Position numbers and translations under genes: made by a program. The notes beneath the pieces are model-generated. The model searched no databases and was not told the origin of the DNA. It saw only the letters and a list, made by a program, of their open reading frames with translations. DNA of 62,552 nucleotides, filler included, from Choristocarpus tenellus KU-1152 (lineage: Eukaryota; Protista; Phaeophyceae), in NCBI GenBank assembly GCA_964200185.2. It is 12 parts of 12 records of this genome, joined end to end, with 100 filler letters (N's around TTAATTAATTAA, not from the genome) between each part and the next. Parts side by side here need not be neighbours in the genome. Positions count along the whole stretch, not along the records: positions 31,459 to 34,170 come from CAXNAD020025396.1; 11 more parts are not named here. One strand, 5' to 3'. Every line of letters begins with the position of its first letter. Within the stretch, counting starts at the first letter, position 1. This document shows positions 9,211 through 34,341 of this stretch, piece after piece.

Positions 9211-11323
9211 ACAAGATGTTTGTGTACAACTACTGTCCTCTAACGTTCATGACCACCAGCGGAAGTAACATCACTCCAGACCGGTGGGTTATGAAGCTCT
9301 TCTATGAACATGTGGTTCGTCCTTTCTAACCCTAACCCTTTTTATTGCCTTTCGTATTCTTTCGTGTAACCCTAACCCTAACCCTATCACCTCTCATGGA
9401 CACTGCAACACAGAGATACATAGCGTGTCACTTGAATTATCTCTGTATACAAAGACATAGATACATCCGCGGTGTGCCCTTCATCGCAGCGCTGGCCCAA
9501 AGCTCTTCATGAGAAGTCCTTGTGATAGTGCCTAACTAGTGCACCTAGTAGTGCCGTTTGATATTTACACGTAGAGCAAGCAATAATGGAGATTTAGGCT
9601 CCTGTTACCTCCCCTGCTTATCCAGTTTTTGTATGTTGTTGTTTGTGTAAACAGTGTGGAATATCCAATGTGGGTGTGTGTCCTGGAGTTGATAGTACCT
9701 TCATCTGCGTCTGCTTCTGTACCCCCTTCTCTTCCTTCAAAAGTTTGGGGTTCGCATCCTGAGCCCTGCTCATTGTTCATGTTACAAACGTACCTGTTAG
9801 CTCAGTCTATGACAGTGCATTGAAACATGGAGCATATAATACGGTCTGGTTGAGAGTGGACCTTGTGAACCAGTTATGCAACACTCATCTCTTTTTCCAG
9901 CAAAGTCGTACCAAATTCACCATCTAAAGTGATACATCTTATTTTCCTCTCTATTTATCGCTTTCTGATCTGGTAACGGATGTTTCTTATTGTAAGGCTG
10001 GCCCCTGAAGAGCGTGAGTTGCTGGACCAAGCCTGTGGGAAGGCCTTGGTGGGCATGATATCTGCCCTCGAGCCCTCAGTGGTTGTTGCTGTGGGAAACT
10101 TTAGCAGGGGAAAGTGTGAAAAGGTATCCAAGATGTGAACATACAAAAAGTCGTGGAGGTGTATGTACGACGTGATGTCTTGACGCATGAGGAGAATGTG
10201 ACAGACGCCTAATCAATGATGCACAAAAGGCCTCATCACCACCTTCGTATATCAGCTCCAACAAAAAAAAGTTCCCCTCCTAGGGTAGCTTTGCTCTCCC
10301 ACAAGAAATTTGCTGTGCCCATGTCCTACTCTGAAGTAGTATTGCACACTGCTGAGAATAGTATATACCCTCTGGATAATCAGTGCACAATTCTGCGTGG
10401 TGTCCTCTTGAGTGAGGTACGATTTGCAACTGAAATTTTCACATGAGGGACAATAGGACCAAAAGCTATAGTTCAACAGGGGATGAGGGGGGGACTGCAA
10501 GAGCTTCTGGGACACCCTGCCATTCTTGTTCCTCTGGTATAATATGTACCATACTGCTACTTAATTTGGGGTGGGATAGGGTACATGCCGACAGATGGTT
10601 TTGATTACCCACCCCTACCCCAAGCCCCTGAGGCTGTCTGTTGCCGAGGGCAAGAGGGATATGACCTGTGTTTTTAGGGAACAAGGACAACTGATGGACC
10701 TTCCTTCTTACCCATTGCACAGGTTTGGGCTAGTGCCCACCCAGGAGATTTTTGCATACCCCTGCAGGCTGTTTTTGACATATCCATCTTGCCCTCGTTT
10801 TTTTCATGCCCATGATCAGTTCACCTTGTGTTTTAATAGTATATGGTTTGCCAAATATCAGAGTATTAAACAGCGAGAGGTATTCTTCTACAAGCAAGAG
10901 TTACATGATTTTGAATTTCCTGGTTGCCACATTCATTCTTTAGGTCTGCAACCTATAGGAGAGACTTCTATACCCTCTCATTCTTGACTTGGCTCCATCC
11001 CTAGTAGTCTTCGGATATCTACCTGCCATACTTCGTGATGCTACTTTCCAACATCGATGCCCCACTTAAAGCACATAATGTTCCTCCAAAATGTTGATAC
11101 CAACCACCCTTACCCACACACTGTCTTGATTCGTATGTGCATATGTTAGGCTGTAGAGGAGCTGGGCACCTCTGTGGGGACCCTCCAGGTTGTAACCGTC
11201 AATCACCCTAGTCCTGCGAGCCCCTCTGGGTCGAGGTGGATAGAAGCAACATGCCTGAATGACCTGGTTCTGGCCAGCAGCAAAGCCAAGGAGATCGATG
11301 CTTTTCTCAACAATGAACGGTAG
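9211..11323 (+). CDS. SMUG1: SMUG1 (family 3) uracil-DNA glycosylase, 3' part; exons 9211-9283, 9997-10123, 11150-11323
   Basis: Spliced product MFVYNYCPLTFMTTSGSNITPDRLAPEERELLDQACGKALVGMISALEPSVVVAVGNFSRGKCEKAVEE...VNHPSPASPSGSRW...* carries the SMUG1 NYCPL, GxNxTP, VxVG and HPSP motifs. Exon phases are compatible. The 5' exons are cut off by the linker. Confidence 0.88.
9327..9385. repeat. Short interstitial telomere-like (CCCTAA)n runs (also 3460-3472)
   Basis: Runs of 2-3 units, e.g. taaccctaaccctaaccct. Confidence 0.6.
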
Positions 11324-11667
11324 CTGTTGGTGATGGTGATCAAAAGTGTGTTTAAGTGTGGCATTAGAACTGATATCGACAGTGCAAAGAGTTTGAGTGA
11401 AGCATTAAAGGTGGAGGATGTAGTGGACATGCCACTTGCTGGGATGGCTGGTATTGGAGTGAACAAATATCCTATTTGGCTAGTCCTAGATGTGATGCAA
11501 TAGTTGAGTTTGGCGATTATACTTGCATTTTTCACACGGGTGAGTGGTTGAAGAGATGTGCGCAACCAGCCTTTGATGCCTCTCGCGGTGTCATGCATTG
11601 TGTGGTACAGTGCGCAATTGGGTGTTCCCCCCTAAGACACACCATTACATGGAACAATATGCACTCC

Positions 11668-11924
11668 GAGTGGATGTATCTTAGAAGGTACGAGTTTTTC
11701 CCTGTTTGTCCATTTGGGACTTGGCTTCCCATGGGGTTTTTAATGACATTCACCTACTCCGAAATGTATAGGAGAAGGTAAATGTATACTTTATGAAAAG
11801 ATGTGTCCAAAACATGGATATTGACACTTACTAACAAACACGATAGTCACTATTTCATCAAAATCGCAACATTGGATTTGGCCCCCAAATGGACGCGGCT
11901 CTCCCCTCTAAGATACTTTGACTC
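11668..11924. mobile_element. MITE family A (~257 bp; TIR GAGTSAAAGTATCTTAGAGGGTA), TSD CTCC
   Basis: Terminal inverted repeats, CTCC on both flanks, and homology to copies at 19799, 23618, 35262, 36309 and 62012. Confidence 0.88.
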
Positions 11925-31174: not shown

Positions 31175-31478
31175 GGGTCAAAGTATCTGGGGGGGGTGGC
31201 GGCTGTCCATTTGGGGCCAATTTTTTCATGTCGCGATTTTTGGGTGATTCGGTTCCATATGTTGGATAATGAAAGTGCACTTTTCCTGGTTTTGGTCCAA
31301 ATGGACACTCTGGTGTAGACCCCCCCCCCCCCCCCCCACACCCTTTAGGGCCCCACAANNNNNNNNNNNNNNNNNNNNNNNNNNNNNNNNNNNNNNNNNN
31401 NNTTAATTAATTAANNNNNNNNNNNNNNNNNNNNNNNNNNNNNNNNNNNNNNNNNNNNCCCCCCAAATACTTTGACCC
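31175..31478. mobile_element. MITE family B sequence on both sides of a linker
   Basis: gggtcaaagtatctggggg...tggtgtagacccc before the linker and ccccaaatactttgaccc after it. Flanks TCCA/AAAG differ. Confidence 0.85.
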
Positions 31479-31536
31479 AAAGCTCAAATGAGTGGACTGA
31501 CGTGTTTCTCCAACAAATGGTGTCTGTTCCATCAAG

Positions 31537-33665
31537 GTAATGTGGAGTTAGCCAAGGCGGTCGGATTCTACTACGGCAACGAGAACTACAACTGGTATTC
31601 GATGAACTCCCCAGGCATCACTGGTCTCTTCAACAAGTACTGCCTTTCGTGAGTCAAGCCCCTGACCTGAGAGGAATGATAGAAGAGTTTATTGAGAAGG
31701 CTTAAATTGAATCACCGTTTTAGACAGCAGGTTGTTTTCAATGTGAAAGAACCACTCAAAAAGAACGCACATATTTCAGACTTTTCATTACAGGTCGCAG
31801 CAATACAAGTTGCTTATCCTACTGCGCACTTCCTTCATCCATGGCAATAATCCGGTTTTATCTCAAACAGATAGTTGCAACTCCTTTCTACTTCTATGCC
31901 CGCACCCTGTGCATCTATACATGTATTTGTGCTTGACAGGAGCGGGGCCGATGCTTTGATGACATGCTACCCTGGTGACAACACCTACCTTCCTGGTGTC
32001 ACCAGTGTCTCTCTCGTCGCAGACAACCCTTTCCATCCTCTAACCACCACAGTTAGCACCAACGGTGAGAGTATTCCTTCCCATGAACGTCTTGAGAACA
32101 TTTATAGCTAGGTCTGTTTCCGTGTTTCAACCAACCTTAAAGTTGAACGAATCCTCAACAAGAAAAGAGCAGGGATACAGCATGTTGGGCATGAGGTATA
32201 CCATTGCAGCAGTTGGCACAACCTGCACTCATCCTAAGGTAGACCCTCTTACGCCCTTCCCAAATATCCCCCTGAAAAATACCGTTTCCTTAGGATATGA
32301 CGGAGTAACTATTGTGCCACGGTTTGCAACATTCATCTACTACAACTGCAAAAATGCAGATGTGAGAATTTATGTCGAAACTTGACAATGGGTGTGTCTG
32401 GAGACGAGATTTTTGACTTGTAGTAATGCCAGCCTCGTGAATGTGTTGTTCAACGTGATCATTGCACCCCTTTTCTCATCATTACTTCAAGTTTGTGTAT
32501 TGATGGATGCCTTCACTTCAAGCAAGCAAGTGGGGAAGTGAGTGAAGTGTGAGCCCGTTATGAGCTAGTCCCTCTTCTGTGAATGCTCATATATTCCTGT
32601 CACTCTTGACTCCCACAGTGCCTTGTGCAAGAGAACGAGTGGATCAGGCGTGTTGTCTGCGAGTGTGAGAATCTGGATCCCTCTGCTCCCACGGGGGTAA
32701 GTCTTTCCTATAGTGCCTATGTTTTCCCTTCCTCCTCCCCGTTCCTACTTTACTCCACAAGCGTTCTCTTGTTCCTACTTGCTCTCCTTCTGAAGTCGAA
32801 ATGCGCTGGGGAAACTGTTTCCAGCTAAAATCAATATTGATGACAAAGTACAGAGTCAAAAGCCTCACTCTACTCACGTTCCGCATCATTGCGCACTATC
32901 TCTTCTTCTTACTCAAGACCTGCGGAAAATGCGATGGTGACATTCAATCCTTTGGGTCCCTGGACAACCTTATTGCCTGGGAAAAGGAAGCCACAACAAG
33001 GCAGATCCTTGGGGGCTACCGTGATAAGTACATGTTCCACCAGGTATGCTAAATTTCCTTTGGGAAGGAAGTATGTATATCACGTTGAGGTTCAAGTGCC
33101 TTTGGAACAGAAGAATATCTTTTTTCAAGGTCCATCTGATCTCTACCGCATGTGTTTATGTTTACAACCTGCGTTAGGCTTCTTGTCAATAACTAGTAAA
33201 ATTTTCTCTCCTTTCTTTTTATCTTGCCTTGATGTTGCTGTGCCATGGCAGGTCAACGTAATCCCCACTACCATCGACGGTTCCAGCATTTCCCTCCTTG
33301 CATACTGGATTGTGCAGATGATGGAGGAAATCACTTCATCCATCAGCTTTCCTATTGAGGTGATATTGATGCACCTCTCAAGTGACGTACAAAGCAATAA
33401 TTTGACCGTAAATCTTGCCAACACAGTGCATGTTCTTGCAAGACAGAGATGCGAGCTTCATTTTTTTGACCTCACAATTGACTATTGCCTTCCCTCCATC
33501 CTCTTTCCTCCCTTCCTGACCCCCCTGACCTCCTCTGCCACGCAATTTACTACTTGTCCATGGCGTCTCAGACCCTTAAGTTTGATCATCTCTGCCACAA
33601 CTTTAACTCCCACGAGACAATGGACAATGCTGCACCTCTGCTAAGGGCCACCAAGGGCGCTGATG
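31537..33665 (+). CDS. agd3: Agd3-like (CE18) carbohydrate deacetylase, internal/C-terminal exons 31537-31648, 31940-32064, 32294-32361, 32619-32696, 32918-33043, 33252-33359, 33572-33665
   Basis: Seven phase-compatible exons with no stop give SPGITGLFN, CYPGDNT, NPFHPLTTTVSTNGYDGVTIVPRFATFIYYNC, ENEW, LIAWEKEATTRQILGGYRDKYMFHQVN and SLLAYWIVQMMEE..FPIETLKFD. These are colinear with motifs I recall from the fungal Agd3 catalytic domain (PPAITGLHN, VGDNT, PRWATRIYYNC, HDxYMFHQAN, WPxxTxxH). Recognised from memory, not by search. Confidence 0.78.
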
Positions 33666-34114
33666 GTAAGATGCTTGTGCCCATGCCCATGCCGTCCTCT
33701 CCTATTTGTTCCACCTATGATGCCCATCAGATGTGTGGTTGTACGTGTTGAACAAGTTGCAAGTCTTGTAAGTGTTGCTTGTCCTAAAGGTGTGATCGAA
33801 GCAGGGGATACTTCATCGCAGTGAAATGTCTATATCTGAGTGTGTCACCCTTTCATGCTTGCTTGCTTCTAAACTGCTCTGTGCTAAGTTGGCATTCATA
33901 CTCTAGGTACTCATATATAATGGCATTTTACCTAGGAGGTGATAGTGTGTGCGAAGCTAGCGATTCTTTCTCCCTTCAACTCATCACACACATGCCAACC
34001 CACGATCTCGATTGCTTTGAAATGAGCATCGAATCAACTAAATTGAGAACATTGATATATAGTAAATTGTTTGAACTGAGCATTGGATCAATGAGGTTGA
34101 GAATAACACATTGA

Positions 34115-34341
34115 GACTCAAAGTATCTGGGAGGGGGTGGCGGCTGTCCATTTGGGGTCAATTTTTTCATNNNNNNNNNNNNNNNNNNNNNNNNNNNNNN
34201 NNNNNNNNNNNNNNTTAATTAATTAANNNNNNNNNNNNNNNNNNNNNNNNNNNNNNNNNNNNNNNNNNNNAAAAAGGTGACATCGAAAAAAAGGGAAAAA
34301 GGGGCCACCCGTCCCCCCCCCCCCCCCAGATACTTTGACCC
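34115..34341. mobile_element. MITE family B ends on both sides of a linker (two distinct copies)
   Basis: The same end of the element appears in inverted orientation on each side. Confidence 0.8.

What the first reader, a model, noticed from the sequence alone, without database searches (positions are those of the whole stretch)
31537..33665. Intron-rich Agd3/CE18-like exopolysaccharide deacetylase in an apparently algal genome
Seen: seven short exons, invisible as a unit in the ORF track, splice in phase into a stop-free stretch of about 237 aa with PGITGLFN, GDNT, VPRFATFIYYNC and DKYMFHQ. Known: this motif order matches Agd3, the Aspergillus enzyme that de-N-acetylates the biofilm polymer galactosaminogalactan, a family described mainly from fungi and bacteria. 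The PR arginine and MFHQ histidine motifs are intact. Inference: the host may make or modify an amino-sugar polymer (adhesive or wall) outside the standard alginate/fucan/cellulose picture, or use the enzyme against microbial biofilm. Dense introns in the host style argue for long residence rather than bacterial contamination.
Basis: partly seen in the sequence, partly recalled or inferred. Interest (0 to 1): 0.8.

Follow-up and report, generated by a model that had tools for sequence, protein, structure and literature searches.

The report
Brown-algal Agd3-type amino-sugar deacetylase gene fragment
This is the middle part of a real, transcribed brown-seaweed gene from a family related to the fungal biofilm enzyme Agd3; brown algae and related giant viruses carry many copies, which hints that seaweeds make or break down an amino-sugar polymer for which I found no description.

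Summary
Seven GT-AG exons give 237 stop-free codons. RNA-type contigs join introns 2-5. Exons 3 and 5 hit Pfam Agd3_CE and the Agd3 structure 6NWZ, and carry the equivalents of R613, M666 and H668. The metal ligands (DD, HxxxH) and the signal peptide lie 5' of the piece and could not be checked in this copy.

The host is a brown alga of the Discosporangiales, probably Choristocarpus tenellus: 72-73% identity, 8 of 8 intron sites shared, same flanking repeat. It is not a contaminant. Full-length relatives keep all four catalytic motifs and fold like whole Agd3 (Z 45.5).

The family is multi-copy across brown algae. Some members are fused to WSC or GH114-associated domains. Intronless copies sit in phaeovirus-like giant viruses, some near an Sph3-like gene. 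Databases already label Ectocarpus members 'Agd3 domain'. A published orthogroup table appears to list the family under 'WSC'. I found no paper discussing it.

Best reading: a secreted metal de-N-acetylase of an alpha-1,4-GalNAc-type polymer, working with the algal GH114 enzymes. The substrate is not shown. This particular copy may be 5'-truncated.

The parts
31537..31648 (+). Exon 1 of the piece (an internal exon; starts just after the HxxxH motif of homologues); holds PGITGLFN
   Evidence: 78% identical to Choristocarpus P0002/P0003; RNA contig match ends at the donor
31940..32064 (+). Exon 2; holds GDNT
   Evidence: 73-78% to Choristocarpus; joint 32063/32293 GT..AG
32294..32361 (+). Exon 3; catalytic motif CM3, Arg codon at 32320-32322 (Agd3 R613)
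   Evidence: PF25115 E 1.3e-5; 6NWZ chain 484-501; joints on both sides
32619..32696 (+). Exon 4; start of the cysteine-rich insert found in brown-algal and viral members but not fungal ones
   Evidence: joints 32361/32619 and 32695/32917
32918..33043 (+). Exon 5; catalytic motif CM4, Met 33032-33034 (M666) and His 33038-33040 (H668)
   Evidence: PF25115 E 5.9e-4; 6NWZ chain 517-547; joint 33040/33249
33252..33359 (+). Exon 6; late part of the deacetylase barrel
   Evidence: 58-61% to Choristocarpus; RNA coverage
33572..33665 (+). Exon 7; end of the barrel and start of the C-terminal beta domain; GT donor follows, next exon not in the piece
   Evidence: 65-68% to Choristocarpus; no exon 8 in 33666-34170
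31459..31536 (+). Tail of the upstream intron, with a CTGAC branch-like motif at 31497-31501 and the AG acceptor; also an in-frame ATG at 31488; read through by an RNA contig
   Evidence: X3 record 17 runs unbroken 31459-31648 at depth 21.8 with 0 differences
31459..31480 (-). End of a high-copy dispersed repeat at the left edge of the piece, inverted relative to the right one
   Evidence: inverted pair I2; joints to 34115-34133
34115..34170 (+). End of the same high-copy repeat at the right edge (MITE-like by inference); also found in Choristocarpus loci
   Evidence: hundreds of unrelated flanks and very high summed depth; near-matches in L001/L002, none in L009 or L101-L103

Best explanation
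The piece is the middle third of a nuclear gene of a Discosporangiales brown alga, probably Choristocarpus tenellus, and one of several paralogues. The family encodes a secreted, three-domain, metal-dependent carbohydrate de-N-acetylase built like Agd3. Shown here: gene structure, transcription, host lineage, purifying selection, CM3/CM4 in this copy, and all four motifs plus the full Agd3 fold in close relatives. Inferred from Agd3 biochemistry: a DD + HxxxH metal site activates water, the Arg positions the catalytic base, and the MFHQ His protonates the leaving amine, turning N-acetyl-hexosamine units into cationic free amines. Inferred substrate: an alpha-1,4-GalNAc-type polymer in the alga's own extracellular matrix, with the algal GH114 (Ega3-type) hydrolases cutting the deacetylated stretches. 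My odds by step: host Agd3-family gene about 0.97; family catalytically active about 0.85; alpha-1,4-GalNAc-type substrate about 0.6; own polymer rather than microbial about 0.6.
For: Gene structure and RNA joints. Pfam and PDB hits per exon. Agd3 motif definitions from PMC7229062. D377, D378, H510, H514, R613, M666 and H668 equivalents are kept in 36-40 of 40 brown-algal proteins, the misses being mostly gaps; the equivalent of CBM Trp344 is kept in 34 of 40. The model of Discosporangium P0010 matches 6NWZ over all three domains: Z 45.5, 612 residues, rmsd 2.9; the next hit is NDST1 at Z 23.6. dN/dS is 0.11-0.135 against Discosporangiales paralogues. GH114-associated domains are fused to four algal members and one viral one. 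Brown algae hold about 5 GH114 genes per genome; the cited paper reports the family's activity only from outside brown algae (PMC11468063). A viral copy lies near an Sph3-like gene.
Against: No assay exists. I found no paper reporting a GalNAc/GalN polymer in brown algae. A Gtb3-like synthase was not tested. Identity to Agd3 is only 22-26%, and the CBM87 Pfam model does not hit the algal proteins. The matching orthogroup is absent from Fucus serratus and Sargassum, which keep GH114, while Choristocarpus has no member in the GH114 orthogroup. Copy numbers correlate only weakly within brown algae (rho 0.43, p 0.06, species not independent). No partner genes lie next to the algal copies. This copy's 5' half is unseen.
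Confidence: 0.45

Rival explanations
1. Anti-fouling role. The enzyme is secreted to deacetylate galactosaminogalactan or Pel made by fungi and bacteria on the thallus, so that the alga's GH114 enzymes can cut the biofilm. The alga makes no such polymer itself.
For: Ega3 is specific for deacetylated stretches (PMC7229062). Both families are amplified and tandem. WSC fusions occur. No algal polymer or synthase was found.
Against: Phaeovirus-like viruses keep intact copies, which fits a substrate on the host cell or made during infection better (inference). In Aspergillus, deacetylation promotes adhesion.
Confidence: 0.2
2. Same chemistry, different substrate: a GlcNAc-containing or later-sulfated glycan, as with the structurally related heparan N-deacetylase/N-sulfotransferase, or a glycoprotein glycan.
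For: NDST1 is the second-best fold match over two domains (Z 20-24). The algal/viral clade sits on a long stem and has a six-cysteine insert between CM3 and CM4. Brown algae have a family labelled 'putative deacetylase sulfotransferase'. One viral copy lies next to a cellulose-synthase-like GT2.
Against: Agd3 scores twice as high as NDST1 and is the only sequence hit in the PDB. The CBM tryptophan equivalents are kept. The GH114-associated fusions and the Sph3-like neighbour point to alpha-1,4-galactosamine chemistry.
Confidence: 0.22
3. Independent of family function: this copy is a recent 5'-truncated duplicate, cut by a repeat insertion upstream of exon 1 and transcribed from that region. 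Any product (ATG 31488) would lack the signal peptide, the CBM and the metal ligands, and be inactive.
For: An RNA contig runs unbroken from the repeat through the acceptor into exon 1 at depth 21.8, close to the 19-26 of this copy's spliced contigs. A paralogue's 1643-nt contig instead leaves at the acceptor and continues about 1400 nt upstream. At least three close genomic copies share intron sequence.
Against: The branch-like motif, acceptor and phase match the conserved intron site. There are no stops or frameshifts, and dN/dS is about 0.12. Intron 1 is also partly retained (depth 10.8), so retention alone could explain it. Contigs drop rarer forms. Choristocarpus contig L001 ends in the same repeat, so the edge is probably an assembly break.
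Confidence: 0.3
4. Fungal or bacterial contaminant contig.
For: None beyond the family's best-known distribution.
Against: Identity is 72-73% to Choristocarpus against 27-35% to fungi and 22-29% to bacteria. 8 of 8 intron sites are shared with Choristocarpus. The host repeat lies at both ends.
Confidence: 0.01

Closest known systems
Aspergillus fumigatus Agd3 (CAZy CE18 + CBM87; PDB 6NWZ; Pfam PF25115)
   Same: Motif order and residues CM3 and CM4 in this copy; CM1-CM4 and the three-domain fold in full-length relatives.
   Different: Only 22-26% identical. Six-cysteine insert of about 25 residues between CM3 and CM4. PF25116/PF25117 not detected. No five-gene cluster around the algal copies. 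Multi-copy, with WSC or GH114-associated fusions. Substrate untested.
Brown-algal PF25115 proteins (UniRef 'Agd3 deacetylase domain-containing protein', Ectocarpus CBJ25807/CBJ25806; probably orthogroup OG0000186 of bioRxiv 10.1101/2024.02.19.579948)
   Same: Same subfamily; 47-73% identity exon by exon; five intron sites shared with Ectocarpales, all eight with Choristocarpus.
   Different: Labelled automatically, or as 'carbohydrate-binding WSC' with a fungal 'extracellular serine-rich protein' as best hit; not discussed as CE18 in the main text. Introns at three sites were seen only in Discosporangiales.
Intronless homologues in phaeovirus-like Nucleocytoviricota contigs (L003, L007, L010, L020, L096, L098)
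   Same: About 50% identical to the exons; same motifs and cysteine insert; one clade with the algal genes, SH-aLRT 100.
   Different: No introns; neighbours are viral core genes, hybrid histidine kinases, a protelomerase, an Sph3-like gene or a GT2.
Human NDST1 N-deacetylase domain and Pseudomonas PelA
   Same: Related barrel and N-terminal domain (Foldseek E 3e-13 and 7e-8).
   Different: 8-14% identity; no sulfotransferase or hydrolase domain in the algal proteins.

Membership tests
Agd3/CE18 | Match to the Agd3 deacetylase profile PF25115 | tested here: met
   Exons 3 and 5 at E 1.3e-5 and 5.9e-4 in the right order, each below cut-off alone; full-length relatives 154-170 bits against a cut-off of 27.6
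Agd3/CE18 | CM3 arginine (R613) | tested here: met
   Exon 3 aligned to 6NWZ; R in 40 of 40 algal relatives
Agd3/CE18 | CM4 Met666 and catalytic His668 | tested here: met
   Exon 5 aligned to 6NWZ
Agd3/CE18 | CM1 Asp-Asp and CM2 HxxxH metal ligands in this copy | not testable with these tools
   They lie 5' of the piece; present in P0002, P0003, P0010 and 36-37 of 40 algal relatives
Agd3/CE18 | Three-domain fold with N-terminal CBM87-type domain | tested here: met
   Tested on the relative P0010, not on this copy: Z 45.5, model 24-725 on chain 142-794; W344 equivalent in 34 of 40; Pfam PF25116 itself not hit
Agd3/CE18 | Secretion signal | tested here: inconclusive
   Off the piece; signal-like hydrophobic N-termini seen by eye in P0004, P0007, P0010, P0020; no predictor available
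Agd3/CE18 | Metal-dependent de-N-acetylation of alpha-1,4-GalNAc | not testable with these tools
   Needs an assay
Galactosaminogalactan five-gene system (uge3, gtb3, agd3, ega3, sph3) | Clustered partner genes | tested here: not met
   No partner within the fetched flanks of six algal copies; neighbours are other copies or unrelated genes
Galactosaminogalactan five-gene system (uge3, gtb3, agd3, ega3, sph3) | GH114 (Ega3-type) hydrolase in the genome | tested here: inconclusive
   Common in brown algae but none listed for Choristocarpus in OG0000280; that assembly is fragmented
Galactosaminogalactan five-gene system (uge3, gtb3, agd3, ega3, sph3) | Gtb3-type GT4 synthase | not tested
NDST heparan N-deacetylase/N-sulfotransferase | Fused sulfotransferase domain and HSNSD profile | tested here: not met
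   No such Pfam hit in any algal relative; fold likeness only

The most novel reading that the evidence does not exclude
Brown algae, with their sister Schizocladia, run an overlooked galactosaminogalactan/Pel-like amino-sugar pathway of their own: an expanded Agd3-type deacetylase family plus GH114. It was gained at the same node as other wall-enzyme families (GT23, ManC5-E, PL41), makes a cationic matrix or adhesive polymer, and its enzymes are exchanged with phaeovirus-like giant viruses.
Probability: 0.3. Interest if true: 0.85.

Novelty: new variant of a known kind. Interest (0 to 1): 0.58.

Why it matters
Brown-algal walls are described as alginate, fucans and cellulose. The large GH114 family in these genomes has been noted with its activity known only from other organisms (PMC11468063). 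A conserved, expressed, multi-copy Agd3-type deacetylase supplies the enzyme that would make the GH114 substrate. That turns 'do brown algae have a cationic galactosamine polymer?' into a direct test, with bearing on spore adhesion, alginate cross-linking and anti-fouling. The viral copies extend CE18 to giant viruses. The locus itself is only a fragment of one of several paralogues, and the family is already auto-annotated, which limits the score.

Tried and rejected
The joined search, fold and tree of the spliced model were left out. The exon coordinates were concatenated only inside one script to count stops. The database's own record for this locus (P0001) came back from a search and was read, but not used as a query; full-length relatives stood in for it.

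The holin hit on exon 6 (E 0.049) is chance. The big protein search was used once, on exon 5, after the word search came back empty.

Rejected: contamination; a gene-carrying transposon bounded by the inverted end repeats (the repeat is very common in this genome, the arms match over only 17-22 nt, and assembly breaks explain it); the database's longer exon 4. A direction of transfer between algae and viruses could not be fixed. The best trees nest the viruses among intron-bearing algal genes, but the AU test does not reject an all-algal clade (p 0.38), and the bootstrap tree did not finish.

Full report
Observation. The piece 31459-34170 holds seven + strand exons (31537-31648, 31940-32064, 32294-32361, 32619-32696, 32918-33043, 33252-33359, 33572-33665). 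Their phases fit. They give 711 nt = 237 codons with no stop, and all six introns are GT-AG and 208-291 nt. Three public runs from one study hold the stretch. X3 behaves like RNA and has GT..AG joints for introns 2-5 exactly as predicted. Searches were done exon by exon; the joined step was left out.

Family. Exons 3 and 5 hit Pfam Agd3_CE, and 6NWZ is their only PDB match. With a numbering offset of 122, the PR arginine is Agd3 R613 (motif CM3) and MFHQ holds M666 and H668 (CM4), all essential in Agd3 (PMC7229062). CM1 (DD) and CM2 (HxxxH) lie upstream of exon 1, outside the piece. The full search with exon 5 returned, after the locus itself, two Choristocarpus tenellus proteins and a Pylaiella protein. 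A search with one of these gave 54 proteins. Most are from Choristocarpus, Discosporangium, Sphacelaria, Undaria, Cladosiphon, Scytosiphon, Hapterophycus, Pylaiella and Ectocarpus, at 39-70% identity to that query; fungi follow at 26-31%. The seven catalytic positions are kept in 36-40 of 40 algal proteins, and the equivalent of the main CBM tryptophan in 34 of 40. An AlphaFold model of a full-length Discosporangium member (pLDDT 85) matches Agd3 over all three domains (Foldseek E 2.5e-40; Z 45.5, 612 residues, rmsd 2.9). NDST1 follows at Z 20-24 and PelA at 13. Algal and viral members share a six-cysteine insert of about 25 residues between CM3 and CM4 that fungi lack; exons 3-5 encode it.

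Host and age. Summed over exons, identity is 72-73% to Choristocarpus, 67-69% to Discosporangium, 47-58% to other brown algae, about 50% to the full-length viral copies, 27-35% to fungi and 22-29% to bacteria. All eight intron sites bordering these exons match Choristocarpus. Three were seen only in Discosporangiales; five are also in Scytosiphon, Ectocarpus and Pylaiella. So the gene already had introns in the common ancestor of these orders. The repeat at both ends of the piece has eight near-matches (one weak) in two Choristocarpus loci and none in the Discosporangium or Ectocarpales loci. The host is therefore probably C. tenellus or a close relative; this is inference, as the run names are coded. 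dN/dS against Discosporangiales paralogues is 0.11-0.135. The DNA runs show at least three close copies with alignable introns, and the RNA run shows further transcribed paralogues, one extending about 1400 nt upstream of exon 1.

Is this copy whole? No eighth exon was found in 33666-34170. The homologous intron is 291-425 nt in relatives, and here a repeat begins 450 nt after the donor, so the gene probably continues off the piece. At the 5' side, one RNA contig runs without a break from the repeat through the acceptor into exon 1 at depth 21.8, and there is an in-frame ATG at 31488. This may be intron retention or a truncated duplicate; I put truncation at about 0.3.

Partners. Four algal members carry a GH114-associated domain and many carry WSC domains. 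[quoted passage not shown] Ega3, the Aspergillus GH114, acts on deacetylated polymer. The algal genes are not in a GAG-type cluster; they sit alone or in tandem. Intronless homologues occur on giant-virus contigs with VLTF3, D5 and A22, an EsV-1-7-type domain and a CHASE histidine kinase, or a protelomerase. I read this set as phaeovirus-like, and my own knowledge. Two such contigs carry an Sph3-like gene nearby; these two show no viral core gene in the stretch held and are grouped by gene density and tree position. Another has a cellulose-synthase-like GT2 next door.

Phylogeny. Brown-algal and viral proteins form one clade on a long stem (SH-aLRT 100), apart from fungi and bacteria. In the fungus-rooted tree Discosporangiales branch first (weak support, 82), and the viruses sit among intron-bearing Ectocarpales and Laminariales genes (quick trees, no bootstrap). 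This suggests host-to-virus capture, but the AU test does not reject algal monophyly (p 0.38). The donor of the algal gene is not resolved.

What is already known. The Agd3 paper reports fungal and bacterial homologues only. UniRef names Ectocarpus members after the Agd3 domain. The held, truncated part of the Phaeoexplorer CAZyme table lists one CE18 against 67 GH114. Orthogroup OG0000186 there is labelled 'carbohydrate-binding WSC', with a fungal 'extracellular serine-rich protein' as best hit. It has 0 copies in Heterosigma, Phaeothamnion, Tribonema and Chrysoparadoxa, 5 in Schizocladia, 7 in Choristocarpus, 3-26 in most other brown algae, and 0 in Fucus serratus and Sargassum. I infer it is this family, from near-matching contig numbers, the three tandem Pylaiella copies and the labels; I could not check it by sequence. 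My literature searches found no paper linking Agd3/CE18 to algae or their viruses; the library lacks most subscription papers.

Mechanism and verdict. The most likely reading is a secreted metal-dependent de-N-acetylase that turns an alpha-1,4-GalNAc-type polymer in the algal matrix cationic and makes it cleavable by GH114 (0.45). Rivals are a different amino-sugar substrate (0.22) and use against microbial biofilm (0.2). The chemistry is inferred from conserved residues and fold; the substrate and its source are not shown, and no synthase was tested. This is a real gene fragment from a distinct algal-viral branch of a known family, auto-annotated but apparently unstudied. Interest 0.58.

Noticed in passing
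L007:8782-13261: A probably viral Agd3-like gene is split by an HNH / His-Me endonuclease ORF on the opposite strand (10490-11875); the C-terminal part resumes in another ORF and is fused to a GH114-associated domain. L098 is broken at a similar place. Possibly a mobile intron.
   Followed up: partly
L007:3473-4492 and L098:3601-4506: Spherulin-4 (Sph3/GH135-like) gene about 4 kb upstream of the Agd3-like gene; E 5e-9 to Sph3 structures.
   Followed up: partly
L003, L010, L011, L012 (match near 9700-12250 in L003): Syntenic giant-virus contigs with VLTF3, D5, A22 and a hybrid histidine kinase carry an intact 763-848 aa Agd3-like gene with a signal-like N-terminus.
   Followed up: partly
L096:545-15185: Cellulose-synthase-like GT2 next to the Agd3-like gene, with TnpB, an EsV-1-7-type domain, RING fingers and a CHASE histidine kinase further on.
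   Followed up: partly
L020:4-900: Telomere resolvase (protelomerase) next to an Agd3-like gene.
   Followed up: no
window 31459-31480 and 34115-34170: Inverted ends of a very high-copy dispersed repeat bound the piece; the same repeat recurs in Choristocarpus L001/L002 and ends contig L001. Probably a MITE; family not determined.
   Followed up: partly
window 31649-31939: Intron 1 is partly retained in the RNA-type run (depth about 11 against 26 spliced), unlike the later introns.
   Followed up: no
L102:1-31558: Three Agd3-like genes in a row in Pylaiella, two with WSC domains, in alternating orientation; Undaria has three consecutive gene numbers.
   Followed up: no
L100:7305-9428: A stand-alone Agd3-like gene on a Burkholderia stagnalis plasmid, near an integrase and outside any polysaccharide operon.
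   Followed up: no
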